From NCBI GenBank assembly GCA_020891255.1, contig BQFW01000004.1:992001-1056000 (forward strand): a DNA stretch of 64,000 nucleotides. Reading direction: 5' to 3'. The stretch is from Entomortierella parvispora E1425 (Eukaryota; Fungi; Mortierellomycota). The first letter of the stretch is position 1; the number at the start of each line of letters is the position of its first letter. Under the pieces are notes generated by a model that made no database searches, was not told where the DNA came from, and saw nothing but the letters and a program-made list of their open reading frames with translations. Positions 12,325 through 28,100 of the stretch are shown here, piece after piece. A program made the translations under genes and the position numbers.

Positions 12325-13133
12325 TTTGTTCCCGAGTTTGCATAACAGCTAGCAAAAGACAAGACGAGTGAAGCGAGTTTGAGGAATGCGCGTTTTTTTT
12401 GGGCCCTGCAATTCTGCAGTTGACCAAAGCGACAATCATAATAAAAGAAGAGTGGTACCGAGGGAGGGGAGCACGGACGGCTCAACGGTTCTTTTTTTTT
12501 ATTTTTTCTTCTGATATATTATATTCGTTTTCATACAGCAAAGAAAAGAAAAAATAAAAAGAACGCCCAATGGGTTTTTTGTGCACACGACCCAACTGGT
12601 TCTTTTTTAAGTTTTCCTTATTGGGGATGTCCCAAGCTCTCCCCTTCTCTGTCGGCGTTGGTGATTTGGGACCATGCAAGAGAGCAAGGGAAACTCAAGT
12701 GTGGTAAAGGTGCAAAAGGTGGGCAATTAGTCTAGCAGGCAACAGACAGACAGAGAGGGGGACGGAGAGTGCGCGTTAGCGCGTGTGCGTGCAAGAAAAG
12801 TAGACTATGAACACACAGAGAGAGGGGCCTAGAGAAAGAGGAGGAGGAGAGGGGAAGGAGACCAACCCATCTGCTATTTTTACGGTCGTTTGAGTTACAT
12901 AGCCATATTTTTGCACCCCTTCTCCCCTTCTCTCATAGTTCATGAAGTCATGGGCACATGCATTCACCCGACCCTCAGGCACAAGGGAGACGAAGCAGAG
13001 TCGGGTTCTCAGCTACGCCTCAATAGTGCAGGAAACCAATCCGCAGGCAAGAGAACGAGATGAAAGAGTGGAGTGCATACGTGTCGTGAGGGGATGGTCG
13101 CGACGCGTCCACTCCCTCTGCTTGATTTTTTTT

Positions 13134-13273
13134 GGGTATATCGAATTTAGTTGAGTGTGCTCACAAGTTGAGTGTGGCATGTTACCTTAAATTCATCGGC
13201 ACAGGTTGGTGGCGCATCCAATTACCTTAAATAAAATGGATACGTCACCGAATCCATTTGAGGCCCATTCAGC
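13134..13273 (+). repeat. MULE left TIR (140 bp)
   Basis: GGGTATATCGAATTTAG...GGCCCATTCAGC; compared base by base with the reverse complement of 21652-21791, no mismatch seen. Confidence 0.95.
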
Positions 13274-14339
13274 GAAAAGCGCCACCAATCCGTCCCTTTT
13301 TTTTTTCCCCCTCTGCAGGATCGCGATGAACCTCTGTCTTTGTTCTCTCTCTCCTTCTCTTTCTCTTTCTCTTCATCTGCCCTAGTATTTATGTTCACAT
13401 AACCTTCACATCCTCGAAGTCATCTCTTGTGATGCAACCATTCTACTTTAGCGACACGTCCAACAAAGGCCCCCGAGGTGCAGAACACGTCTCATTCATT
13501 CACATTTGGCAACACTCCAATTCTGTTGTCCCACCGGTGCAGTTGATATGGTCGGTTCCTCCTTGTAACTGTGTTAGATCACAAGTTCTAACTTGAGAGT
13601 CGTCACCATGGCCTAGCTTCGAGGGGACTTCGAGGCATAGACGGTCTCAGCGTTATCAGCTTCAACAAGCTTGGCGTACAAACACTTGCAAGGGTTTATG
13701 AAGTGGGTGGATATCGTGTCACTAAACATTCTAGAAGAGGTCGACTATTTAAATTACGAGATGGGGAGAGTGTCAATGCCTTCGTGTGTTATGTTAGCAA
13801 AAGAAGTGACAACAAGATCAAAGAGAGCGACTCTGTACAGTACATGTCACGAACGGTCGAACTGCCAAATATGGGACACGACGGTCTTTCCCAGCCCGTC
13901 GTGTAACATCAGATGTACCTGTTGTCACGGCCAAGAGCCCAGATCAGACTTCGACTCGACACACTTTCCTAGTATCATGACCCCCGATATAGTTGACATG
14001 AACTATAGAACATCAAGACCATGGAGCCCAAGGTCCAGCCCACTCTGTGTCAGCTTCAGCCTCCGTACCAGACCAGTCCCCACTTTGGTGTCCTCCTCAA
14101 CTCATGATAAATAGCTAGGCCCTGTACTTCTCAGTCTCCAATTCACAATAAACCATATCTTTCCTCTCAGTGACAGTACACAGCCGCTGAGAGATCCCAT
14201 TGTGTGTCTTCCCCTTTCCCTAACAACGTGTGAACTGCCCTTCACCCTCTGAGCTGCATCAGATCCCCAATCGTTTGTAGCTATACCGCGCCGTTAATAT
14301 CGTTCTCCACCCGAGGTAGCGCGGACTGCACTGTCGTCT

Positions 14340-14975
14340 GACAACTCAGTTGGAATAGGCTAAGGCGACGGTCAGTGAAGTGAGCAAGGGGAATAAACGA
14401 TTGAAAAGCATAGTAGATCTATGTGACCATGTTGTAGGCGAATTTGATACTGCAAAGTCAATGTTGGTAAAGTCAGGGTTGGCAAAATTAGAGGTTGAGG
14501 TACAAAACTGTAGGATCGCAGACGCGCTTTTATTGTACCAATCCTCGCGAGAATCGATCTCGTCGCTGAGCTTGTTCAAAACTTGTGCAGCTCCGTGAAA
14601 ATACTCCTTCCTTTACGAGAGGTCCAATTGAGCAAACGAGTAACGGCCTCGGCGACCCCGACAGTTCTGAACTTGGAGGCACATTGTCGCTGGCTTTGTG
14701 TCCAATGCGCGTCAGTGGTCCATCCACATTCAACCGCGATTGAAAGCCTGGTTACCACAAGGATTTCAGCCAAAGAGCTTGCTGCAAACATGGTACTATT
14801 TACGAATCTACGCGCTTCCACGCACTTGAAGTGCTGGACATCTTCACTACAAAAAAAAGGGAAAAAGAGCGAGGTATCGAACCTGGGTGCACAAGAGAGA
14901 GAAAAAAAAGGAGTCGCTCTACCCAAACTTGCAAAACCACCACTGATTATTGAAATCCTCAAAATTGAGCACCAT
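14340..14975 (-). other. Possible spliced cargo gene or gene remnant inside the MULE, divergent from the 15087 gene; product unknown
   Basis: ATG 14975 (MVLNFEDFNNQWWFCKFG) joins in frame across a GT-AG intron 14922-14847 to EDVQHFKCVEAR. Further intron-like 3' ends lie downstream but I could not build an unambiguous model. Confidence 0.35.
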
Positions 14976-15086
14976 GTTATATCACTTGCATGACCACGTG
15001 ACGCGAGTCTACTTTGCTTGCAGCACTGACAGCGAGAAGATTTACCGCCTCTTGACCCCCACCCCCATCCTTGAAGCGACCCAGCA

Positions 15087-16285
15087 ATGACACCCCATCG
15101 ACAAAAGAGGATTATGAAGCCTAGCAGGAAGCTGGAGATTAAACCGAACGCCTCATCGCATGAAAGGCGCGAATACTACGCCAAGGTATTCATGGACCCA
15201 CCAAATGCAATGCAGCTCATGGATGGCAATTCAGGACAAGGTAGGGGAGCTTTAGCTATAGAAGTCCTTGATGTTTGCCCAGTCTACTCTCTCTCACAAG
15301 CTTGCCGAATCTTCCATTTGTAGATCTGCATAAAGTCGGAAGAATAACATCAGATGCTGCAGCTAGCCATGTTTTTCGCCTTTTTCAATTCAATGCAAAT
15401 TGCACCAATCGCGAGAATATTTTCAGAGCTGTCCTTTTTCTCTACAAAAATCTCCGCGAACTTTCTCAGTTGCAGGACGAGGATTTTTATTTCTCTCACA
15501 GTAGAGATGGAGCAGGATTCAGGGATTTGGCGATGAGACTTGCTGGGGCGGAACCGATACTGGCTGGCGTTACTGCAAGAGCGCTATTTCCTCTATATGA
15601 GCGTCTTGTGCAAGAACGAATAGGCCTGAGTCAACATATTCTGTCTTCTGGGGATGCATGGGTCGACACACGAATGTCAGCAATGGTGCAGGAGATCGTG
15701 AAAATTGACGAGGAAATCAGACGCAGGGACGATCGGCAAAGGATCGCCAAAGGCGTGGAACCAAGAGATAAGATGTATATTCCTATAGGGAGGTCCCCGC
15801 CGTCACTATCAGAACCAACAACCCAGACCATGTCGAACGGCAATCATCCTAGGCATTGCTCTTTGGAAAGGGACAGACAATCGCTCTCAGCCTCAACACG
15901 AGCCGACCCATGTCAGACCGAACTCCCGTCAAAAGTCCCAATGGCTGCTACAGAGTGCCCGCAGAGAACATATTCTTCAGCTGCTGACTATGTGGAAAAC
16001 CTGAAGATTGAAGCCTTTTGGAACGGATTAGGTCATAATTATTGCACATGCCAAGTTTGTGCCCTCTCGAGCAGCATTGTCAGCGGCGTCAACATCATCT
16101 TCAGCGACTTAGCAGCCCTCGTGAACGTCGTTCATCCCAGAGCGCACGAGTCCCCAGAGTCAGAAAGCAAACGCCGAAAGTTCGAACCTCTGCCCAAAAG
16201 CAGCGCGCAGGAATCACAGTCTCTCTGTTCCCGAGACTCAGAGCACGTTTTTGATGTAGTGGCTGAATCAGGATTAAAAACTTGA
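15087..16285 (+). CDS. MULE cargo gene: Myb/SANT(trihelix)-like protein with coiled coil, 371 aa after splicing (intron 15241-15323)
   Basis: Phase-1 GT-AG intron joins ORF 15087 to ORF 15275-16285 in frame. The segment GFRDLAMRLAGAEPILAGVTARALFPLYERLVQER...SGD...TRMSAMVQEIVKIDEE resembles Harbinger ORF2-type proteins; KRRK near the C-terminus. Confidence 0.65.
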
Positions 16286-16520
16286 TTTTTTTTGTGCCCT
16301 GTTCTCCTTCATGGCTCCCTATCCACTTTTTCGTGCTACTCTATAACCGTATCCACTATTTTTTGTTCATCGACGTTTTTGCGATAAGAGATTTGATGGG
16401 GCGTGGGAATGGGGTCGTTTTTGATTGTCGTATGACTAGTGCGGTCACCATCGTTTTTCAGCTTCAGAATTCACACTTTCTTTCAATCCCTACCAAAACC
16501 TCTCCCCCCCCACTACCCCC

Positions 16521-19500
16521 ATGCCCTCCACCGTCGATAAAGACTTCAGTCTATCTCTCAGTGTTGCTCGCCTACTCTCCTTGGATGGAAGACCTCGCCT
16601 TGAGAGTTCAGTCGTAAGGATGGTGAATGATATTCTAGCCGTCAATTCGACACGACCTCTCGAGCGCGTCAACTCCGCTTCAGTCCCTGCCTCGGAGCGC
16701 GCCAACTCCGCCTCGATCCCTGCCTCGGAGCGCGCGAATTCGCCTCCCCAAAGGCCGAGCTCGCCTCCTCAAAGGCAGAGCTCTCTTTCTCAAAGAAGTA
16801 GTGCATCACCCCAAAGGCGGAGTTCGTCTCCTGCCGCCGCCCACCGTATCGGCTCGTCCTCGCATCACTCCTTGGGGACAGCCGCCAAACGACCAGACCT
16901 TGGAAGCTTGAACGAGGGCCCAACATCTCAAAATCAAGGCATCAAGTCTCCCTCGTGGTCGATTTCTTCGAACGAGGCGCTTTTCTCTGATGACGACGAC
17001 TGGCAAGTTATTAGCCAAGAGAAAGGTGTGATCGTCATCAGCGATGACTCCAGGTAAGTCTGATGAAAACTCTGCTACGCTAGCTGATCATTTTTTCGCT
17101 GCCCTTTATTCTTATTCTATTCATCCTTTCCACTGCTTGATAAGTGATGATGACGGCCAAGGGTAAGTCGTAAAATGCAAGGCCAGACTTCAGAAACGTT
17201 TCTGACTTGTGTTTGCACATCCACTATACTATATATTTGCATTGATGTAGCTCTATGCCTCCTAGAGTCAGCTATGCTGACGCTTTGAAGCGGTCCACAG
17301 TACTTGCATCTCGGTAAGGGTTAGCTGTGGAACGACGAGTTTGTACAATAGAACTGACCTTTAATGCTGGCTCCAACATTTTCTGTCCTTTTCTCTATTG
17401 CTTGCTCTCACCGTTACCCTGACCACAGCCCAGCATCCTTGTTCCCAAATGACTCTAATGTCAGTTCATCTGGCAATCAAGGAAAGGCGATTTCAGTCGC
17501 CACTGAAGCTGCGCCTTGTACTGAGTAAGTAAAAGCAGCAGGTAAAGTTGTAATAGATAATGGGATCTTGGACCTGACTCCCTGTCTCTTCCCTTTTTTT
17601 TTTTTTTTTTTTTCTTGTCTTTTAGTGCAGTGTCCAACTCTTTTCCCTCCAACGTGGGTGGCTATTCGAATGAGCTTCAGGATCAACGTTGGGTTGACGT
17701 GCGTGTTATCCCCGGTCCCCCCAGTGAATCTGTTATCCCTGGCGCTGTCAAAGTCGTCGCGCCCAGTGCCAGCTCTAAGCCTGATGTGATCAGTGCCGAC
17801 ACTACTCTCGGCGTCTCTACAAAGCGTGATAAGCCTGGCGTCAAAACATCAGGGTAAGAATTACGGGGAGGAAATCGTGCTGTGGTAGCACAATGAGACT
17901 CACAACTCGTTCTATTCGATTTCAGGGCTACACATCGTTCATCTTCACTCGGATTGGCGCAGGTCATCTCTCGCACCCGCGAAAGAGGTGCTATTCTTGT
18001 TCCTGATGTACATTCTAGGAATAGGAGTGGGTATGTTGCTGTGCCCATGTGCTGTTTTATTAAGATCAACGCTACATGCAAGGAGGGACAAAAATTTACA
18101 GGAGTTTTTTTTTTCTTTTGAAAACGTTAGACTTAGTATGTTTTACCCGCCGACATTGACACAGACCAGTCCCTACACTCGAGGAGAAGATGTATCTTCT
18201 GAAGATGGGCCTCGATCTAGGTATGTTAGTATACGTTTCTTTCCATGATGCTATCCGACGAATTGATCTTCAAATGTCGGTCTCTAAGTTTTTTTTTGAC
18301 CGCAGCCCTCTACACGAATCTTCGGATGAGTTCCCCAACGGTGATGTGCATCTGATACGACTACTTTCAGATTACAGTTCACTTCAATTGGCTCGCAGCG
18401 TTGGATGGGCAACGAAGGTCACCAGCCAATACACACTGAGAACTTCCGGGAAAGTTATCCGCAAGCGCTGTCTCGGTGTGAGCCGATGCCCTCTCCCTTA
18501 CTGCCCTTATGTACGCCGACCAAAAGTCTCGGCGGCTGCTGAAAATACCACCTTCTCCTCAAGTCAACTATCACAGGAGCTGGAAGACGATGATGCCATT
18601 TGTCGTGTACACCAGTTACCACTAGAACCCACTGGCTGTAGTGCAACGATGGATTTGGTTCAGGCAGGAGTAGACCGCATTGAGCTCATCCACCGTGGGT
18701 TCCATGAGCATCCTAAACCGTTGCCCGCGCGTGCAAGTATGGTTGCTCTAAACGATCTTGAAACGATGGTCAACACAGCCCCAGAGGCGAAACCTAAACA
18801 TCTCGTGATCGGAACCGCGACAAGACCTTCAATTTCTATCAAGCATCCGGTTCTCCACAATCTCGGCTATACGAGATACCTGCGATTGCGTTCCCTCAAC
18901 CATGGGAAGACAACCGATAACCTTGGCGAGCTCGCAAATCTGGAATCCAAACTGGGATTCCATTTCCTTCAATCTCACAGTTTGGAAGCAAAGGCTGGTC
19001 ACATTTGTGTGCAGACTGAATTTCTGCGTCAGCGTTGCCGTGGCCCTCTGACCCACATGCAGACAGACTCTTTCCACGGAGCGGTGTTTGAGATCCATAT
19101 CAAAGACGCGAACATCACATGCACAGTTGCCTACTGCGCCTTCGCCGCAAAGGTCATCCCAATTGTTATATCCGTCTTGTTTGGCAAATCCGCGGAGCAC
19201 TACAAACGCCATTTTTCAGTCGTGCTACAGTCTCTTGAGTACAAGTCTTGGGAGGAGTTTGATGATAACTTCCCTGGTATGACCTGCGACTTCTCTGATG
19301 CCGAGCGAAAGGGATTCCAAGCCGCAATCGCCGAACACTACAATGTCAGCGTTGATATTGTTTCACTTGAAGGGCATTACCAGTTTTGCACTGTTCATTA
19401 CCGGCGGTCTTTACGACGCGTGTGTAGGGAAGCCTCTGTTATCCCTGCGGCAAGATCAGATGAATTTTATTTCATTGCTGAGAGTCTCACTCGGGAAGGT

Positions 19501-21454
19501 ATGACTCTAGTCGAGTTTGAAGAGTCTGTTGCATACCTTCTTGAACAATTCCCTCGAGCCCGCAATTGGATCGCCTGGTACATGAATGCCGATCGGAAAA
19601 GCCTTATTTATCCGGCACTGAGGGGGCACCCCCACGTTCTGGAGACATTAGCTTTGGACACGAATGCTCAAGAAGGCTTTGGGGCTCATCTTCGTAACTA
19701 TCTCGAGCGGACAGCGCCCAGAGGCGGTATTGTCAAATGTGTTGAGGCCATTGCACTTTATCAGCAGTCATTCGCCCGAGACTACGACCACGTCCTTCGA
19801 GGCGGAAAACTGACTTATGGCAAGCGACCACCGGTTCCAGAATCTTATATCAATGATGGACGCGCTCCAGATAACGCGAAAGCATTGAGGGCAGCGCAGG
19901 TTAAAGATGAAGCTCGACGTAAACGGGAGTCTGCGCGTTATAAACCCAAGGTGCCCAAAGACTTACTCCAGAAGCCGAAGCAAGGGCGTCGCCTAGGCAG
20001 CCAAAATAAGGCGCCTTCATCGAGGGAAATATTTGACCACAACACGTTCGGCATTCCCTGGGGTGTGGAGCCTTCAAAACTGTCAGGCAATGCACGGTTT
20101 GCGCTCACCAACACCTGCGCCCTCGATTCCTCTCTGATGGCGTGGTACATGTTGGTGTCACTTTCTGGAGCGACGCTCCCCCCCGCTATGATTTCTTCAA
20201 CTGTAGGCTTGGCTCTTCTGTCAGTAATGGCCCACCTCCACGCAAGGCGATATGACATGGCTAGGCGCCTCTGGTGCACAGACGTGATGAAGCTACCTGG
20301 AAATAGACATCACGACCTCTATCTAAGTCTTGAGGCGGTCTTCCTTGATCTAGTGCCAGGCCTGACAAGGTTCGAAGTGTCCAGGGTATCCTCGTGCAGT
20401 GTACCCGGGTGTCCTCAAGAAGTCAATCATGCCGCCCCACGGTCTGTCATCATGCTTTCTCCCGACATCATTACACAGAAAACATTTAATGAAGCACTGT
20501 CGGCATCATTCCCGCACAGTTGTACCAAAAGGGTTGCTGGATTCAACATCACGGGCCACAGTCGGCAAGAGTGGACGATCACCGACGAGGGCGAGGAGTC
20601 CTGGACTGCATGCTCAGGGCAGAGATCTCAAGGCCCGATGCTGGTCGCAGAATATCCGCCTGTCCTGCTTTTTGGACTGTGTCCAAGAATACAGGAGCAG
20701 TCAACACCGGGGGCCGTGGATCATGCCTGTTTCCGTCTTGAGATTTGATGCCGAGATCTACCACTTGGCAACGATTTTCTACTTCAACAACAATCACTTT
20801 TGTTGTGCTGTCATCGTTGGTAACAGCGTGTACCTCTATGATGGCAAGCCCTTATACCCGCGGACGAGGCTGATTAATCTTTCGCTTTTGAAGGATTTTT
20901 GCCAACCCGAAGGGTACCGACCGATCCTTTTCTGGTATTTGCATCAACAGACAACCTCGCTGGATACGACAGATATGGACCCTAAGACCAGCAGCAAAAA
21001 TGATCAAAACTACACTATGACCGCCGCCGTTTCTCCCACTGTGGCTCAAAGCCCTGTGCCCGTAGCGCTGGTGCCGTCTCAGCCGCAGTCTGGTGTCGCG
21101 TCGCCAACGCGCTCCTCTGATGTTGGCAAAGAAACAAAAAAACGAGAGTTTCCTTCCATCACAGATCAAGAAGCTGCCAGTAATTCGATTGTTCTTCGGA
21201 GAAGCAAACGGACTAAGCACCCTATTGGATTCAGTTATGGAGAGATTGCTTCGAACGGCCCGCTTCCTATCTGCCAGTCTTGTGGGAAAAAAATAGAGCG
21301 AGATAGCAAGAGGTTTCTGCTAACAACACTGGAGGACGATGTGAAAAAATGGCGTAACACCAAGTCTTACCACTTCACAAGAGAGTGCATGAGGGCAATG
21401 CCCTCCAAGTATCATCATTCAGCCGAGGTTGCTCTGGAGCAGAATGGGGCATAA
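16521..21454 (+). CDS. MULE transposase: low-complexity N-terminus, GCM DNA-binding domain, DDE core, USP-like Cys protease, PARP-like Zn finger. 8 exons; +1 frameshift near 20669-20713 (1191 aa as written, about 1426 aa if corrected)
   Basis: Exons 16521-17053, 17145-17162, 17251-17313, 17429-17524, 17626-17853, 17926-18030, 18131-18220, 18306-end splice in frame. GCM-like GWA...KRCLGVSRC...RRP...C..H...C...HRGFHEHPKP; D 19066 (QTDSF), D 19288 (TCDFS), CTVH 19387-19398, E 19672 (TNAQEG); NTCALDS 20110; NHF 20792; YDG 20837. Confidence 0.85.
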
Positions 21455-21651
21455 GGAGTAGGAGATGTTGTGTCTCTAATATTGGGAAATAAAGAGTGGT
21501 TTTTTTTTTTTATTGAAACGCCTGACGGGGTTCAATGAATTAGGAGGCGCACATTGATTCCGCCTGCCTGCACTGTGATTTGAACGGTGCCATCGTCTCA
21601 TCATTTGCGCCGAGGGTGGGAAGTGGGAAAATATGGTGTTTTTGGCGCGTT

Positions 21652-21791
21652 GCTGAATGGGCCTCAAATGGATTCGGTGACGTATCCATTTTATTTAAGG
21701 TAATTGGATGCGCCACCAACCTGTGCCGATGAATTTAAGGTAACATGCCACACTCAACTTGTGAGCACACTCAACTAAATTCGATATACCC
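21652..21791 (-). repeat. MULE right TIR (140 bp)
   Basis: Exact inverted copy of 13134-13273, followed by TSD ATTTTTTTT. Confidence 0.95.
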
Positions 21792-22168
21792 ATTTTTTTT
21801 GAGGCGTAGTGGGCGTTGCACAAGATTTTCTTTCTTTGCCCGTGAGCCCTGTTTTCTGGAAAAAAAACCTCAATTTGTCAGTTTCTTTCGAGGACGAACG
21901 GCGGAGGGGTAGCTATCGTCATCCCCCCGTGATGGCGGTCGTCGAGAAGAAGAAGAGGAAGTGGAGGCGAGGATGTTACAGCATGTCTTTATCTTGAACA
22001 ACACTGTGGTATATTTTGACTCCATGGCGCAATGGATTTTTCAAGAGATGTGTTTTTATTATATGGTACACGGGGGACAGAGACGAGATGAGAAAGACGA
22101 GAAAGAAGTGATATTTTGTTTGTGGTCTCCCTCCCTCGTCGTTGTTTTTGTGGGTTGGGGGGTTTTTT

Positions 22169-25100
22169 TTACCAGAAGGCACAGTATCCGATCCAACACT
22201 GACAGAGGTTCTCAGTCGAGGTGGCCTGCTGAATCAGTTTCTCAACCTGAGATTGAACATCCAGACTCTTGTCCGGGGTGAAATCACGTCCTGTCAACTT
22301 GTTGGTCACCCTGTTCAAGACCGTGATGGCCCTCTGGTTCAAGGGCTCGGCTGGATTCTGTTGACTGTCCGAGGTAGAGAGTCCCTCCAAGGAATCCGTT
22401 ACCGTCGAATGGTGACCATTGACTGGAACAGCCAAATTGTTTTTGGCGCCTCCTGCGGCAGTTTTGGTAGTAGCCCCTGCCGCTGTTGCTGTTGCTGTTG
22501 CCGCCGCCGTCGCCGCCGCCGCCGTCGCTTTTTTCAATTTCTGATTCTTTTCCTTTTCAATCAATTCTTGTTCACTTGGCACGATGGGCCGTCTCAAACT
22601 CCGAGCCAGACTCAGTCCTTCCTGCTCTCCTTGGAGTGCGGTGTTCGCAGTGGTCGTCGCCACAGCCTTACGGCCGCCAGCAGCGCCACCGCCAGCAGCA
22701 GCAGCCGTTCCAGTGGCGCCTGCCGCCTGCTGTGAGGCTTGTGTGGACTGCTGTGGCTGTTGAGGGCTAGTATGCAGGATCCTCCAGTTAATCAACGGAT
22801 CATGGACAAAGGCCTCCAAAACGGCCATAACCGACTCCTTGTTCTCCCGCAACACTCTCATGACCGACTCACTCGTCTTCCTGAACGACCCCTCATATCC
22901 GCTGACCTCCATCGCCAAGACCAACATTCGCGTCAATCGGAAGGGAATCCGTTCAGGGAACTGCGCTCGATGCATCGCCACCTCAAAGCAGTCGCCGAAA
23001 TCAATATGGACGATCCGTCCCGTGTTGCGATCCATCATAATGTTGGACGGGTGACGATCGCCCAAGCCCAGGATGTGGCCCACCATCGACATGACCGCCA
23101 AGGACCGCGTATAGGTCGTCCTGCGTTCTAACCACACTTCAGAGTTCTTGGACTTTAGCCAAAGAATCTTGTAGAGGTCTTCGCCCGAGGTCTTGCTCAG
23201 CATGTGCTCAAAGATTTCAACCTTCTGCATCACTGTCAACAGATCAAAGCCGCGATCGGCTGGAGGTGGCGCCATCTGGGTCAAGAGCTGATGCTCTGTC
23301 TTCAAAGAGAGGCCGCGACTATCGCGGTAGCCCTTGATCAAGTTGTGAAGGGTGTCCGTATCCTTGACCCATCCAATCAATCCCGAGTTTGGAGACAGCG
23401 GCGTCACAGAGTATTGCTGAATCGACAAATGGCGCTTGAACGTCTCAGGATCGGCCGCCAGCAGCGTGTTCACCAATCCAAACAACTGCATCACTCTTTC
23501 ATCCTGTCGCAGATCCTCATGACCCTTGAGCAAGAACTCATGTTCCCGACCATCGCTGCCCAGGATGCTCAGTCGACGGGGGTGTTGTTTCGAGGACAAG
23601 ATGGACATGGTGGGGACAAAGGATGTGATTCTGACAATCGGCTCGCCACTCTTGTACGTTCCTGGAATCGCTAGATCCAGATCCCGGACGCCTTGAAGCT
23701 GAGGCGAGACATAGGGCAGGTCCAGAGTCTCGAGGGCCGGAATCTTTCGAATCTTCTCAAAGACATGCATGTAAATGCTCCAGGCATTGTTGAGTTCATT
23801 ACCATCGCGTGTTTGTCTGTACCGAACACAGCAATCAAACGCTTCCTTCAGCTCCCGTCCGAATGTCTTGACAAACACGACCTCACTCATTGTCTCTGGC
23901 CGCTATTATAAGAACAAGTAACAGAAAGAGAATGCGTATCAGTAACAAACGAGCAAACATAAAAGGATATGACCAAAAAAAAAAGAAAAAAAGACGCACC
24001 TTCATAATCATCCGATGCAACGGGTCCAAGATAGCAAACATGGTGTCGATGTTTCTGTTGCCTTGAGCGCTGTGGTTATACACATCTTGCAGTCCCTCCT
24101 CCCACATCTCATGCCAAAGAATCGCCACGCGGACCAGCTCACTGCTGACCAGCAACGCTTGGTTGACCAGAACAGGACTGTGGACCATCATGCTCTCAAT
24201 AATGGCCACCGCAGCATTCTTTCGGAACACGCTCGGAGATTTCGAAGCCACGGCGAGAGAGTATACCAAGGCCTGAGGGTGGGCTTGTCCAACATCCGAG
24301 AGCAGCTTGTGGATCAGCCGATGCACATTCTGACTGGGCGCATGGATCCTGGCAATCAATTGAGGAATCACTTGAAGCCAGGTATCGATCGATACCGTCG
24401 GGAACCCTTGGCTGAGTGTCGCACTGACATCAGCCCGGTGACCAAACTTGAACCAGAGTGTCAAGAGTCGAAGCGTGTCTTGAAGCGAGTTTCCGGCAGA
24501 GAGCGCAATGGATCGGAAGAACCCTTCGATCGAGGGGAAAACGTGTCTCAAAACTTGCTCTGCCGTTCCCGAGGCCGCGTTTTGTTCATAGTACGAGATC
24601 ACTTCGAAATTGGCTAGGGCCCATGTATGCCAGGCCTTGTACCAATGTTTGTCCAGTCGAGTTGCATACTGATAGTGGGTCAAGATACTTTCAACAGACT
24701 CCTACAAAACACAGTGTTTTTTTTTGTCAAGTTTGAGTATAGCCACTCCGATATGCAACAAAAAGAAGTAAATAGAATGAATGAACAAAATATCTTACCG
24801 GTGTCCACTCCTCTTGAATGGCAAATTGCCACTCTCCTTGCTTGAGGTAACAACGGGCCAGCAGTCGGGCAAAATCATCTTCCGTGCCTCCGCCCTTATG
24901 AAGACCTGTCAGTGTGTCGCCCTTTCCTGGTGAAAGAGCCGCACCGTTCCTCAAATCTGTCGCGAGTCGATCAGTGAATTCATGAAGACAGCTTAGCGTT
25001 TGTGCCCGGACTCCTGTCGCCCACATGTACTTGAGTTTAGCATACACGACCTGCGGTGGCGTCACAAGAACTAGATTCGTAAACTTCATCTCCACAGTAT

Positions 25101-28100
25101 CCTGTCCGATTAGCGCAACCATAGCTTGCTCCGCCAGCCGTAGGCGACCCGACTTTCGACAGAGGTTCATAAACTTGATCCGAACCACCATGTCCTCGGC
25201 CGGTGTCAAAGCCAGCGCATGGACCTTGATGGTCTTTTGCCAAATCTCCACGTTTCTCTCACAGCCCAGGAGGCGTTTCATCCAGGTTCGTCGAATGGTG
25301 GCCTGTCTCTCTGGCTGCTGAGCGTATTTCTTGTACGCAATAACCTCCTCTAGCTCCGCCATCATCTGAACCCGGACCACGGTTTCGTACGCTCGACTGT
25401 AACTCTCGCTCACCAACGCCGTCATCTCGGTATCCAGCGAGCTTCGAGTTTGCTCAATGCACTCCTTTGCTTGGTCGAATTGCTCCCGTCGCAGGTACAA
25501 GATGGCGCGGAAGAAGGCCTTGTTCGAGGTGTTGTCCTTCATCACCGAGACATATTCACTCAGCAGGTCCCACTGACCAAGGCCCCAAGCTGCCGCAGCC
25601 ACATAGGATGCCATTTTACTCCTGATATTGGCTGAGGCGTGACTCCATTTCTCCTGGGCCAAGGTCGAAAGAGCCTCCCATTCTCCCAGGGCATGAAGAC
25701 ATCGCATCCGTCCGACTGTCAACCACAGATCCTGCGGGTGTTCCAGCTGTTTCCGCTCATAAGCCGCCAAGGCATCTCCCCATCTTTGGAGACGCTCGTA
25801 CCAATACTCCTTGAGTTCAATGGTGTGATGACTCTGAGCATAGGTCAAGATACCAGCTGCCGCATCCGGCTGTTGCAAGTCATCGTTGATCACGATCAAA
25901 GATTCAATGGCCTCCTTGGAGCGATCCTTCATAAACTCCAGCTCTTTGTAGTGAAGTGCCTTGGCATAGGCGTGGCAAGTCATGGCGTATTTGCCCAGTG
26001 TCCTGATCTCGATCGGCAGTGGCTTGTCGTCGTGCTCCATATACTCCGCTACGTTCAAGATGGTCTGGATAATTTCAGGAGATACGTTGGGTGCCACAAC
26101 CGCTGTCCTTAAAGCCTCTGCAAACTCAGCCTACAAGTTCGTAAAATATCAAAAAGCATATGAGTACCGTCGGCAACAAAACCATAATGGTTTCCATAGC
26201 AATCATCGACAATCCTCCTTAATTTCATCGCTAAGCATACCTGGAACTGCTCGGTGAGCGAGGTCCAACAGGACATGAAGGCTGCGTTAAAGAGTTCTCT
26301 TGCCAGGGGTTGAAACGAATTCGCCATTTCGGCACAGGCTCTCAGTGAATGTGAAGGCGTTCCTTTGAGTAGCTCCAGACGGAGTCGTCGGATCCAGTCC
26401 ATCCAGTCGTCCTCTGTAGACCGGGACTGGGTATTCCAGGCTCTTCGCAGAGCCATGGGATTGACGGGCAGCTTTCGGTTGTCGGATTCAGCTTGAGGGA
26501 CATCAGTCGTCAGCACATATCGATCATCGCCCGTTCCAGTCAGTTCTGAAGGTGAAGGGAGGGGATCCTTGTTCATCAGTTTTGTCATGACCAATTCATA
26601 GTTCTTATGAACAATATTCTCTCTTGTCAACACCTAGTAAAATAAAGATATGGTTCGGTCAGGACATTGGATCAGACCATTATAGTCAAATGCGCATGTG
26701 TCTTGGCTTCGCTGGTTACCTTTCGAACGAGCGGAGCAAAGTTCAAATAATTTTGTCCAAGTTGAATCACCATCAAGCAGAGCACATCCATTGTCGCCGT
26801 TCTCAACTCTGGGATAGATAACGCCAGAATTCTGGACAACGCATGCGTAATCCTGGAAGCGTGGTCCGACAGGTCGACTCTCCTCGATAAAGCACCAATC
26901 GTACTAATGGCCGCCCGTCGCAAATTCAAAGGTGCCTCTGGTCGCTCAAAAGTCTTGACCAGCAGTGGAATAATCATGTGCATATACTCCTCGATATTCG
27001 TGCCGAGCTTCACAAGGGCCTGCAAGACCCTGAATGAGGCATTGCCGTGGTGATGATGGGGTTGCTGACGTGGTTGCTGCTGTCTTTCCGAGGACAGATC
27101 TGCTTCCAGAATTGCCATCATGGATCGAAGGAATTTGGGCATGTAGGATTTATACTCTCCATCCAAACAGAGTGCAATGCTCTCGATCAGTCCAATGATA
27201 CGCTCCTGCACGCGGGTATGAGTCCAGTTATCCTGCACTAGCTGGAGGAGCTCGGGTATATAAGGTCGAATATGTTCTTTGACAATCGCCACTAAAAAGC
27301 TCATGTTTTCAAAGTAAAAATCCAGATTCAACAATGTTCCAGATTGCATGATGTTCACGTAAACAGGCATGATCTATATTGTTGTGAAATCGGACCTAGT
27401 TAATTACACATTTTTGACATGTCGCCCATTTTCACATGGTTCAGAGCGAGGGAGGCGTCTTACCTGAGGGAGGAAAGGGACCATCTTCAATCTGAGGGCC
27501 TGGAAGATGTTCAAGATGGCCTGGGTCGCAGGTTGGTACTGTTGGCTGAGGGATGGGTCCTTTAGAATCTTTAACAGGGCAGTAATAACAACGGTGGGAT
27601 AGTACTCATCCGAGGATGGGTCGACTCCATTCATCAGCAGGATCACATCCGTATTGTCCGATTTGTCGCTTTGGTTGGGGTCGCCTGATTCAATCACCAT
27701 TTGCTATTTGAATGGACAAATTGGACAAGTCAGCAAAAACCGTTTCAAGTAAACAAAAAAGAAAAATAGAGATCAAATCCTAGCAAATCTCCAGTTAGCG
27801 GACATTACCTTGTGACGATAAGGATCAAGAGCACCAAGAACTCCAATTAGCTTCATAGTCTCCTGTCGAATTCGGACTGATTGCTCCGATTTCAGAATAA
27901 ACACCAGGATATCCAGAAGAATAGGGTATTTGAGATAGGGATCAATGACATATCCCGTGTTGCTTGCCAGCCTTCCTAAAGCCGTCAGAGCCGCGCTTCG
28001 TTTCATAGAAGAACTCTGGTCCTGCAGAATCTCGATGAAGTTGGGCATCAGCTGGTCCATGTAGGGCAGCATGGCCTCGCCGCCCACCTGTGCTAATTCT

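What the first reader, a model, noticed from the sequence alone, without database searches (positions are those of the whole stretch)
20050..20960. USP-like (ubiquitin-specific protease fold) cysteine protease fused to the transposase
Seen: Cys box ALTNTCALDSSLMAW (Cys 20116), Cys pairs CSVPGC and HSC...C in the middle, PPVLL, then His box YHLATIFYFNNNHFCCAVIVGNSVYLYDG (His 20795, Asp 20840). Established: this order and spacing mirror USP/C19 (GNTCxxNS ... Y.L....H...GHY......W..(F/Y)DD); protease-carrying Mutator/Zisupton elements that I know of carry Ulp1/C48 or OTU domains instead. Inference: a transposon-encoded deubiquitinase-like enzyme that could remove ubiquitin/UBL marks from chromatin, silencing factors or the transposase, or self-process the polyprotein. 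This GCM-DDE-USP-ZnF architecture is my best candidate for an undescribed system in the window.
Basis: partly seen in the sequence, partly recalled or inferred. Interest (0 to 1): 0.85.

Follow-up and report, generated by a model that had tools for sequence, protein, structure and literature searches.

The report
Jumping gene carrying a deubiquitinase-like domain
A young, transcribed Mutator-type jumping gene in the soil fungus Entomortierella parvispora has a ubiquitin-specific-protease (USP) fold with an intact catalytic triad built into its transposase, an arrangement that recurs across eukaryotes and that I found described in no paper.

Summary

The domain (20047-20944) is a true but divergent USP fold:
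- A homologue's model (pLDDT 90.6) matches only USPs in the PDB (VIA Z up to 16.6).
- A 31-sequence family profile hits USP46 (E 4.6e-6), Cys box on Cys box and His box on His box.
- Across homologues Cys is kept in 51/54, His in 57/57 and Asp/Asn in 54/54.
- No Pfam model fires.

The apparent frameshift is a T-run at 20669-20673. Read-derived contigs from the source sample carry one T fewer, which gives one ORF of about 1426 aa. One of these contigs is spliced, so the gene is transcribed.

The host protein is a GCM-like finger, a Mutator-type DDE transposase, the USP-like domain and a C-terminal C2HC finger. It sits in an 8.66-kb element with 140-nt perfect TIRs, a 9-bp TSD and about 4 copies.

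The same C-terminal fold appears on Drosophila NOF and on GCM/SWIM proteins of other eukaryotes. Its nearest named structure is vertebrate C14orf28/DRIP1.

The isopeptidase function is inferred, not shown. This scan had already noted the architecture on other copies in this genome.

The parts
13125..13133 (.). left target-site duplication ATTTTTTTT (9 bp)
   Evidence: the flanks read ...GATTTTTTT|T GGGTATATCG... and ...CGATATACCC A|TTTTTTTTG. With the TIR taken as GGGTAT.../...ATACCC, both flanks are ATTTTTTTT.
13134..13273 (+). left terminal inverted repeat (140 nt)
   Evidence: arms 13133-13273 and 21652-21792 are 100% complementary. The outermost T/A pair is better read as part of the TSD.
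16521..21454 (+). transposase-USP gene; annotated exons start at 16521, and the last exon 18304-21454 holds all recognisable domains
   Evidence: P0001 = EMPS_02890, 100% identical; tblastn places the exons at 16521-17051, 17249-17314, 17430-17531, 17627-18031, 18132-18218 and 18304-20745. With one T fewer at 20669-20673 the last exon stays open to 21454, giving about 1426 aa.
18030..18129 (+). intron (100 nt, GT..AG), removed in a read-derived contig
   Evidence: table 5: the X2 contig skips 18029->18130. This coincides with an annotated exon junction.
18219..18303 (+). intron (85 nt, GT..AG), removed in a read-derived contig
   Evidence: table 5: the X2 contig skips 18218->18304. This coincides with an annotated exon junction.
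18463..18720 (+). GCM/WRKY-GCM1-like zinc finger (KRCLGVSRC...HRGFHEHPKP)
   Evidence: PF03615 GCM hits 3 of 18 aligned relatives, best E 6e-7; 1odh (GCM domain bound to DNA) has probability 1.00, E 0.11 and TM-by-target 0.41. The window's own sequence gets no Pfam hit.
19057..19680 (+). Mutator-type DDE core: D 19066-19068, D 19288-19290, C..H 19387-19398, E 19672-19674
   Evidence: the second D, the C, the H and the E are invariant in 18 relatives; the best PDB matches are the ISCth4 (IS256-family) transposase, E 7e-5; the nearest ESM Atlas clusters carry PF10551 MULE or SWIM.
19852..20010 (+). linker with the invariant NDGRAPD motif and a basic AT-hook-like G-R-x-x-G-S-x-N stretch
   Evidence: N549, D550, G551 and P554 are invariant and R552 is nearly invariant. 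One search gives the coordinates. Function unknown.
20047..20944 (+). USP-like (C19-like) papain-fold domain: Cys 20116-20118, His 20795-20797, Asp 20840-20842; conserved finger cysteines at 20395, 20410, 20521 and 20611
   Evidence: profile hit to USP46, E 4.6e-6. AF2 model of homologue P0002:590-910, pLDDT 90.6; the Foldseek top 50 are all USPs. VIA Z up to 16.6; triad conservation.
20669..20673 (+). T run that is one T too long in the window (apparent frameshift)
   Evidence: table 4: 'left out 1' at 20669 in the contigs of X1 (depth 303) and X2 (depth 172); removing one T restores a single ORF.
21266..21388 (+). C-terminal C-x2-C...H-x4-C zinc finger, possibly PARP-type
   Evidence: C30, C33, H63 and C68 are invariant in 12 relatives; the family profile's best PDB hits are the PARP1 zinc fingers (E 4e-4 for two-finger constructs; single stretches are weak); there is no PF00645 hit, only sub-threshold DUF7576.
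21652..21791 (-). right terminal inverted repeat (140 nt)
   Evidence: The X1 and X2 contigs end or branch at 21789-21798 (table 7).
21792..21800 (.). right target-site duplication ATTTTTTTT

Best explanation
The segment encodes a divergent but catalytically competent USP-fold (C19-like) cysteine isopeptidase. It is a built-in domain of the transposase of an active Mutator-superfamily DNA transposon. The domain order is GCM-like DNA-binding finger, DDE core, linker, USP-like domain, then a C2HC finger.

The most likely mechanism is as follows. After the transposase reaches its element ends, the tethered USP domain removes ubiquitin, or a ubiquitin-like modifier, from proteins at the transposition site. 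Candidate substrates are the transposase itself, histones or DNA-repair factors. This would protect the transpososome from ubiquitin-dependent turnover or silencing, or steer repair of the excision and insertion breaks.

Shown: the fold, the conserved Cys-His-Asp triad, the in-frame fusion kept over long evolutionary distance, the intact ORF in reads, transcription and splicing, perfect TIRs, the TSD and about 4 copies.

Inferred: that the domain is enzymatically active, that its substrate is ubiquitin rather than another UBL, and that it benefits transposition.
For: Fold:
- The AF2 model of the intact homologue P0002:590-910 has pLDDT 90.6 and pTM 0.87.
- All 50 best Foldseek PDB matches are USPs, E 1e-10 to 1e-8.
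- VIA-align gives Z 14.7-16.6 over about 240 residues to USP35, CYLD, USP30, USP1, USP46, USPL1 and USP7.

Sequence:
- The 31-member family profile hits USP46 (E 4.6e-6) and USP12 (3e-4). NTC aligns on the GNTC Cys box, HF on GHY, and YDG on FDD.
- In the model the Cys is the first residue of helix 34-49. The His and Asp flank the hairpin 267-280.

Conservation: Cys 51/54, His 57/57 and Asp/Asn 54/54 among homologues down to about 20% identity.

The fusion is old and in frame. The same order is seen in P0002-P0012 (Mortierellomycota and soil metagenomes) and P0013-P0015 (Agaricomycetes). AFDB clusters named 'GCM domain-containing' or 'SWIM-type domain-containing' carry the fold at their C-termini, and so does Drosophila NOF P16320, residues 773-1056.

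The element is alive:
- 140-nt perfect TIRs and a 9-bp TSD.
- Read depth 303 against 77 in the flank, with several different flanks.
- A spliced contig that carries the 4-T, open reading frame.

Precedent for the idea: Ulp1, OTU, VTD and one C19 domain have been reported on transposon proteins (PMC2836005, PMC1702500, PMC9741609).
Against: - No Pfam USP model (PF00443/PF13423) matches any single member, even at E<=10. TM-scores to solved USPs are only 0.45-0.51. The domain is therefore an outlier whose substrate cannot be read from homology.
- USP folds include SUMO-specific (USPL1), ISG15-specific (USP18) and inactive (PAN2) members, and all of these appear among the matches.
- The triad geometry could not be measured, because model coordinates are not exposed.
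- No biochemical or genetic data exist.
- Read contigs collapse the roughly 4 copies. This particular copy could truly carry 5 T and be broken while its sisters are intact.
Confidence: 0.62

Rival explanations
1. The domain is a SUMO (or other UBL) isopeptidase rather than a deubiquitinase. It would be a USP-fold functional replacement for the Ulp1/C48 SUMO protease that many Mutator elements carry, countering SUMO-dependent silencing or repair control.
For: USPL1, a USP-fold SUMO-specific enzyme, is among the good structural matches: Z 15.5 and E 4e-9 to 6e-9. Ulp1 domains are the commonest protease on MULEs and Ginger1 elements (PMC2836005). The family is too divergent from canonical USPs for a Pfam hit, so ubiquitin specificity is not guaranteed.
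Against: USPL1 is not the best match. USP35, CYLD, USP30, USP1 and USP46 score higher. The only significant sequence-profile hits are the ubiquitin-specific USP46 and USP12.
Confidence: 0.17
2. The domain is a cis-acting processing protease. It would cut the 1426-aa polyprotein, for example releasing the transposase core from the C-terminal zinc-finger tail.
For: Processing was proposed for the OTU domain fused to Medicago MULE transposases (PMC1702500). Long low-complexity linkers flank the domain.
Against: USP-fold enzymes recognise a folded ubiquitin or UBL moiety upstream of the scissile bond. No ubiquitin-like domain was detected in the protein by Pfam. No conserved Gly-Gly site stands out in the linkers of the alignments.
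Confidence: 0.07
3. The domain is a non-catalytic ubiquitin or UBL-binding module (pseudo-USP, as in PAN2). It would tether the transposase to modified chromatin.
For: PAN2 pseudo-USP domains are among the structural matches. Activity is unproven.
Against: The nucleophile Cys, the general-base His and the Asp/Asn are kept in 94-100% of homologues. This is not expected for a binding-only module, and PAN2 has lost its catalytic Cys (established knowledge).
Confidence: 0.1
4. The domain is a passenger: a host USP gene fragment recently captured by the element (Pack-MULE style) with no role in transposition.
For: Mutator elements are known for capturing host gene fragments (established knowledge; PMC6446971 abstract).
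Against: The fusion is in frame. It is shared by relatives at 20-60% identity in two fungal phyla, always in the same position between the DDE core and the C-terminal finger. It is far from canonical host USPs, with no Pfam hit. The same arrangement is seen structurally in other eukaryotes.
Confidence: 0.03

Closest known systems
Ubiquitin-specific proteases (MEROPS C19; e.g. USP46/USP12, USP7, USP35, CYLD, USPL1)
   Same: The thumb-palm-fingers papain fold is shared over about 240 residues (Z up to 16.6). The catalytic order Cys...His...Asp is the same. The Cys sits in an N-T-C box at a helix start, and the His box is followed by an aromatic-Asp. Conserved cysteines lie where the finger zinc ribbon sits.
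   Different: No Pfam PF00443/PF13423 hit. The motif variants are NTCxxD(T/S)xLM instead of GNTCYxNSxLQ, and HF...YDG instead of GHY...(F/Y)(D/N)D. The domain is embedded in a transposase rather than a cellular regulator. Its substrate is unknown.
Vertebrate C14orf28 / DRIP1 (classified as a USP-like papain-fold protein of unknown function in PMC10318531)
   Same: It is the best named structural neighbour in three comparisons: AFDB Swiss-Prot E 2e-15 and 1e-14 against about 1e-9 for canonical USPs, ESM Atlas shape search TM 0.66/0.64, and protein-language-model features 0.96.
   Different: C14orf28 is a free-standing host protein of about 310 aa with no transposase. Sequence-level homology to the fungal family could not be tested here, and identity in the structural alignments is only 15-16%.
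Drosophila FB-NOF element 120.7-kDa protein (Swiss-Prot P16320; RepeatMasker class DNA/MULE-NOF)
   Same: It is a large transposon protein whose C-terminal residues 773-1056 match the USP-like model (E 1.6e-9, TM 0.51). The class name places it in the Mutator superfamily (the term is seen in papers).
   Different: It comes from an animal foldback element. I could not obtain its sequence to compare the transposase cores or the catalytic residues. I found no paper that mentions a USP domain in it.
Protease-bearing DNA transposons: Ulp1-MULEs (KI-MULE/CUMULE), Ulp1 or OTU Ginger1, OTU-MULE of Medicago, OTU/VTD Helentrons, and a C19-IS5-like fusion in Trichomonas vaginalis
   Same: In each a papain-superfamily Ub/UBL protease domain is fused C-terminally to, or carried beside, a transposase (PMC2836005, PMC1702500, PMC9741609). 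The same functional speculation applies: ubiquitin or SUMO control of transposition or repair.
   Different: Here the protease is USP-fold, not C48, OTU or VTD. The only C19 precedent I found is on a different transposase superfamily (Pfam transposase_11) in a protist.
Mutator superfamily transposases (eukaryotic MULE; bacterial IS256 such as ISCth4) with WRKY-GCM1 N-terminal fingers (PMC1702500)
   Same: Shared features are long TIRs, a 9-bp TSD and a DDE core with a C-x2-H motif between the second D and the E. The nearest solved fold is ISCth4. The nearest Atlas clusters are MULE/SWIM. A GCM-type finger is present.
   Different: PF10551 and PF00872 are not reached. Only one of 18 relatives hits PF00872, at E 0.033. 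No SWIM finger was recognised. The extra USP-like and C2HC domains are present.

Membership tests
USP / peptidase C19 | Papain-like thumb-palm-fingers fold of the USP catalytic domain | tested here: met
   The model has pLDDT 90.6. The Foldseek top 50 are all USPs with probability 1.00. VIA-align Z is 14.7-16.6 over 216-251 aligned residues. This was tested on homologue P0002 (43% identical to the window's piece), not on the window's own chain.
USP / peptidase C19 | Cys box: catalytic Cys at the N-terminus of a helix, preceded by Asn | tested here: met
   NTC aligns to GNTC of USP46/USP12. The Cys is the first residue of helix 34-49. Cys is kept in 51/54 and Asn in 51/54. The window codon is 20116-20118.
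USP / peptidase C19 | His box with catalytic His, and a downstream Asp/Asn after an aromatic residue | tested here: met
   HF...YDG aligns to GHY...FDD of USP46. His is kept in 57/57 and Asp 51 plus Asn 3 of 54. The window codons are 20795 and 20840.
USP / peptidase C19 | Cys, His and Asp side chains within hydrogen-bonding reach (a formed triad) | not testable with these tools
   Model coordinates are not exposed to scripts. Only the alignment to catalytic positions is available.
USP / peptidase C19 | Score above the curated threshold of Pfam PF00443 (UCH) or PF13423 (UCH_1) | tested here: not met
   No hit at E<=10 for the window ORFs, P0002 or P0003. None of the 31 family members hits at E<=1. 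Only a family profile reaches USP46.
USP / peptidase C19 | Isopeptidase activity on ubiquitin conjugates | not testable with these tools
   This needs probe and AMC assays.
Mutator superfamily (MULE / IS256) | RNase-H-like DDE core with a C/D-x2-H motif | tested here: met
   D318, C351, H354 and E451 are invariant. ISCth4 transposase is the best PDB match, E 7e-5. ESM Atlas shape matches go to PF10551/SWIM clusters, TM 0.45-0.54.
Mutator superfamily (MULE / IS256) | Pfam PF10551 (MULE) or PF00872 (Transposase_mut) above threshold | tested here: not met
   Only one of 18 relatives hits PF00872, at E 0.033, and none hits PF10551.
Mutator superfamily (MULE / IS256) | Long TIRs and an 8-11 bp TSD | tested here: met
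   The TIRs are 140-141 nt and 100% complementary. The TSD is the 9-bp ATTTTTTTT.
GCM / WRKY-GCM1 zinc finger | Match to the GCM DNA-binding domain | tested here: inconclusive
   PF03615 hits 3 of 18 relatives, best E 6e-7, and precomputed hits exist for P0013 and P0015. 1odh has probability 1.00 but E 0.11. The window's own sequence gets no hit.
PARP-type zinc finger | C-x2-C-x28/30-H-x2-C finger (spacing recalled from memory), Pfam PF00645 | tested here: inconclusive
   The invariant pattern is C-x2-C-x29-H-x4-C. The best PDB hits of the tail profile are PARP1 fingers 1 and 2, at E 4e-4 for the whole sequence but about 0.8 per stretch. PF00645 is not hit, and only sub-threshold DUF7576 appears.
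Ulp1 (C48) or OTU proteases, the usual transposon proteases | His-Asp-Cys order (C48) or the OTU fold | tested here: not met
   The order is Cys...His...Asp. No C48 or OTU chain appears among the listed top structural matches, and there is no Pfam hit.
C14orf28 / DRIP1 family | Sequence-level homology to vertebrate C14orf28 | not tested
   Only structure and language-model similarity is available. No C14orf28 sequence could be fetched, and the profile search of the large protein database returned nothing.

The most novel reading that the evidence does not exclude
The USP-like domain is an ancient, dedicated module of one Mutator lineage. That lineage would include Drosophila NOF and GCM/SWIM-bearing transposases of fungi, plasmodiophorids, cnidarians, rotifers and aphids. 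The uncharacterised vertebrate gene C14orf28/DRIP1 would then be a domesticated copy of this transposon domain. That would give a human orphan 'USP-like' protein a transposon origin and a testable enzymatic ancestry.
Probability: 0.3. Interest if true: 0.75.

Novelty: new variant of a known kind. Interest (0 to 1): 0.6.

Why it matters
Transposon-borne ubiquitin or SUMO proteases (Ulp1, OTU, VTD) recur in unrelated element superfamilies, yet their role in transposition has never been established. This is a USP-fold version in an element that looks currently active. It has perfect ends, about 4 identical copies, a spliced transcript and an open 1426-aa frame, and its fungal host can be cultured. 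That makes it a practical system to ask what a transposase-tethered isopeptidase does.

It also defines a divergent USP clade that Pfam does not see. It links that clade structurally to Drosophila NOF and to human C14orf28/DRIP1, whose function and origin are unknown.

A practical point: the public gene model EMPS_02890 is truncated by a homopolymer error in the assembly and so misses the His box and the C-terminal finger.

Tried and rejected
- Pfam scans of the window ORFs, P0002, P0003 and all 31 domain sequences gave no protease family.
- phmmer of P0002 against PDB sequences found nothing. Only the family profile worked.
- The word-indexed search with the family alignment A1 returned no hit at all. 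It therefore could not supply C14orf28 or NOF sequences, and sequence-level tests of those links were not possible.
- I considered an intron as the cause of the frame change at 20670-20750. I rejected it because the read contigs simply lack one T and the homologues are collinear there.
- Ulp1/C48 and OTU identities were rejected on residue order and on fold matches.
- The Kyakuja-Dileera-Zisupton (KDZ) idea for the transposase was rejected. Neither structure nor language-model neighbours point there; they point to MULE/IS256.
- Literature searches for USP or C19 on Mutator, NOF or KDZ elements gave no description. One search gave only the T. vaginalis C19-IS5-like remark, read. The library lacks most subscription journals and Repbase Reports, so this is not proof of absence.
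- Triad distances could not be measured, because no coordinates are available.
- One of my scripts translated the upstream piece in the wrong frame (piece A). That output is ignored.
Full report
WHERE AND WHAT

The window comes from the mortierellomycete Entomortierella parvispora. The big ORF 18190-20748 is 100% identical to the annotated protein EMPS_02890 (P0001, 1191 aa). The finding lies in the last exon of that gene.

The gene sits inside a DNA transposon bounded by 100% complementary inverted repeats at 13133-13273 and 21652-21792. Read with the outermost T/A pair as flank, the element is 13134-21791 (8658 bp). It then has 140-nt TIRs and a 9-bp target-site duplication, ATTTTTTTT.

OBSERVATION

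- Cys box TNTCALD, Cys codon 20116-20118
- CSVPGC, 20395-20412
- HSC, Cys codon 20521
- ACSG, Cys codon 20611
- PPVLL, 20656-20670
- His box NNNHFCC, His codon 20795
- YLYDG, Asp codon 20840

As assembled, the Cys box and the His box are in different frames. The annotated protein stops at a frame-1 stop (20746-20748), before the His box.

THE FRAMESHIFT IS NOT REAL IN THE READS

Contigs assembled independently from two runs of the same sample were laid on 18000-22300. Both leave out one letter at 20669, in the T run 20669-20673 (table 4). With four T the frame runs on as ...YPPVLLLDCVQEY...EIYHLATIFYFNNNHFCC...YLYDG... to the stop at 21452-21454, giving a protein of about 1426 aa. This is collinear with the uninterrupted homologue P0002 (...YPYLLVLDCLQ...).

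Those contigs collapse several copies and can drop rare variants. This particular copy might therefore still carry 5 T. What is shown is that the intact form is the dominant one in this genome.

The X2 contig also lacks 18030-18129 and 18219-18303. Both have GT..AG ends and both sit at annotated exon junctions. It is therefore transcript-derived, so the gene is transcribed and spliced, and the message carries the open frame through the USP-like domain and the C-terminal finger.

Depth in X1 is 303 over the element against 77 in the unique flank. Several different sequences continue beyond the right end. This indicates about four near-identical copies at different sites. Two other strains under the same species label lack the element body.

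WHAT THE DOMAIN IS

Single-sequence searches are blind to it. There is no Pfam family at E<=10 and no PDB sequence hit.

Homologues exist. The word-indexed searches and the exhaustive HMMER search over 1.84 billion representatives found 81 proteins at E<=1e-3, of which 47 are at E<=1e-10. Most come from soil metagenomes. One is named Dissophora globulifera, another member of the Mortierellaceae. More distant full-length relatives come from the Agaricomycetes Candolleomyces, Tulasnella and Mycena.

A 31-sequence alignment of the domain (A1) has near-invariant positions. These are the Cys box N-T-C-x-x-D, the His box H-F, and Y-D-G 13-15 residues later. There are also cysteines at the positions expected for a finger zinc ribbon. 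Over all homologues that cover each site, Cys is kept in 51/54, His in 57/57 and Asp/Asn in 54/54.

The A1 profile hits USP46 (E 4.6e-6) and USP12 (about 3e-4) in the PDB sequence set, with USP7 just below significance. It aligns NTC on GNTC, HF on GHY and YDG on FDD.

An AlphaFold2 model of P0002:590-910 built on A1 is confident (pLDDT 90.6, pTM 0.87). The Cys is the first residue of a long helix, and the His and Asp lie on and after a beta hairpin.

Foldseek against the PDB returns only USPs in its top 50, including USP18, USP7, USP14, USP28 and USP35, at E 1e-10 to 1e-8. VIA-align gives Z 14.7-16.6 over about 240 residues to USP35, CYLD, USP30, USP1, USP46, USP54, USPL1 and USP7.

I conclude the domain is a divergent member of the USP (C19-like) fold with a preserved catalytic triad. 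It works like a USP. It fails the curated Pfam membership threshold, so I file it as USP-like rather than as a canonical C19 member.

WHAT IT IS FUSED TO

The N-terminal 600 residues of P0002 were modelled on 18 relatives (pLDDT 74).
- The best PDB match is the IS256-family (bacterial Mutator-like) transposase ISCth4, E 7e-5. The GCM domain-DNA complex 1odh also matches with probability 1.00 at E 0.11.
- ESM Atlas shape neighbours are MULE/SWIM clusters, TM 0.45-0.54. Language-model neighbours are all PF10551 MULE clusters, score 0.95.
- Pfam GCM (PF03615) fires in three relatives, best E 6e-7. PF00872 fires in one only, at E 0.033.
- The invariant D, C-x2-H and E map to window codons 19288, 19387/19396 and 19672. 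The first D is at 19066.

The C-terminal tail has an invariant C-x2-C-x29-H-x4-C pattern. Its profile finds the PARP1 zinc fingers as best PDB hits (E 4e-4 for whole sequences, weak per stretch). Pfam zf-PARP is not hit. A PARP-type, DNA-break-sensing finger is therefore a reasonable but unproven reading.

An independent homologue on a 24.6-kb metagenome contig is also bracketed by inverted repeats about 4.4 kb apart.

HOW WIDE

AlphaFold-DB cluster representatives that best match the USP-like model are long proteins carrying the fold at their C-terminus. They are auto-named 'GCM domain-containing' (A0A0H5R1N7, E 9e-23, TM 0.74; F4RLB4; A0A2N5TJL9) or 'SWIM-type domain-containing' (A0A814FZU2). 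Further unnamed long proteins follow. From their accession series I believe these include plasmodiophorids, rust fungi, a sea anemone, a rotifer and aphids. That attribution is from memory, because the tool hid the organisms.

In Swiss-Prot, rank 4 is the 120.7-kDa protein of the Drosophila NOF-FB transposable element, residues 773-1056. RepeatMasker calls this class MULE-NOF (the term was confirmed in papers).

The best named neighbour of all is vertebrate C14orf28/DRIP1. It scores E 2e-15 and 1e-14 against about 1e-9 for canonical USPs, is the top shape match in the ESM Atlas with TM 0.66/0.64, and is in the top language-model tier. A 2023 survey classed C14orf28 as a USP-like papain-fold protein of unknown function (PMC10318531).

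This suggests, but does not show, that C14orf28 descends from such a transposon domain.

MECHANISM

Shown:
- a USP fold with an intact, conserved triad
- permanent in-frame fusion to a Mutator-type transposase
- expression of the gene in an element that looks active

Inferred: the domain is an active isopeptidase that travels with the transposase to the element ends. There it would strip ubiquitin, or a ubiquitin-like modifier, from the transposase, chromatin or repair factors. This would stabilise the transpososome, oppose silencing or direct break repair. It is the same idea proposed for Ulp1, OTU and VTD domains on other transposons (PMC2836005, PMC9741609).

I put about 0.6 on a ubiquitin or UBL isopeptidase with ubiquitin as the modifier, and about 0.17 on SUMO specificity. 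USPL1 shows that the fold allows SUMO specificity, and Ulp1 is the usual MULE protease. Smaller weights go to a binding-only pseudo-enzyme, self-processing, or a functionless passenger. The conserved triad, the lack of any ubiquitin-like domain in the chain, and the ancient conserved fusion argue against those three in turn.

NOVELTY

The kind of system is known. Examples of a Ub/UBL protease riding on a DNA-transposon protein are:
- Ulp1 on MULEs and Ginger1 elements
- OTU on a Medicago MULE, on Ginger1 and on Helitrons
- VTD on Helentrons
- one Peptidase C19 domain on an IS5-like transposase in Trichomonas vaginalis

These come from PMC2836005, PMC1702500 and PMC9741609. I found no paper that describes a USP-fold domain on a Mutator-superfamily transposase, on NOF, or the link to C14orf28. 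The searchable library is incomplete, and automatic databases already label a few relatives 'USP domain-containing'. I therefore rate it a new variant of a known kind.

This scan had already noted the same architecture on other copies in this genome (s1-176298, s1-201140). Those notes agree with this report but are not independent evidence.

Noticed in passing
window 20669-20673 and 18288: The assembly shows homopolymer-length disagreements with read-derived contigs. There is one T too many at 20669-20673, which truncates the public gene model EMPS_02890. The X1 contig has an extra T behind 18288, inside intron 2. Other frameshifts in this assembly may have the same cause.
   Followed up: partly
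window 21741-21798: Runs of two other strains under the same species label lack the element body (depth 0). They do hold sequences like the outer ~50 nt of the TIR at very high depth (515-896) on many different contigs. This suggests related elements or MITEs sharing the TIR tip.
   Followed up: no
window 22169-26097 (minus strand): A TOR-kinase-like gene (PI3K/FATC-type C-terminus in ORF 22169-23890) ends about 375 bp from the right end of the transposon. The element therefore sits just downstream of an essential gene.
   Followed up: no
window 15275-16285: A 336-aa ORF inside the element, upstream of the transposase gene, has no Pfam hit at E<=1. I did not test that further.
   Followed up: no
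L001:8357-8434 and L001:12778-12857: The inverted repeats that flank a homologous transposase-USP gene on a soil metagenome contig are built from repeated CACAGTG-containing units (AAAAACACAGTG...). This heptamer is the same as the V(D)J recombination signal heptamer, which may be coincidence.
   Followed up: no
P0003 (EMPS_03911) and P0006 (EMPS_07363), same genome: A second, about 55%-identical family of the same architecture exists in E. parvispora. One copy has lost the middle of the USP-like domain (finger region). Another is truncated at both ends of the protein. These are decaying relatives beside the young family in the window.
   Followed up: partly
P0068 (1440 aa, from the representative library): A protein that carries nine tandem copies, at a 147-residue period, of the roughly 40-residue stretch just before the His box of the USP-like domain. 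Origin and meaning are unknown.
   Followed up: no
window 19852-19875: The motif N-D-G-R-A-P-D between the DDE core and the USP-like domain is invariant or nearly so from Mortierellomycota to Agaricomycetes. It matches nothing that I could name.
   Followed up: no
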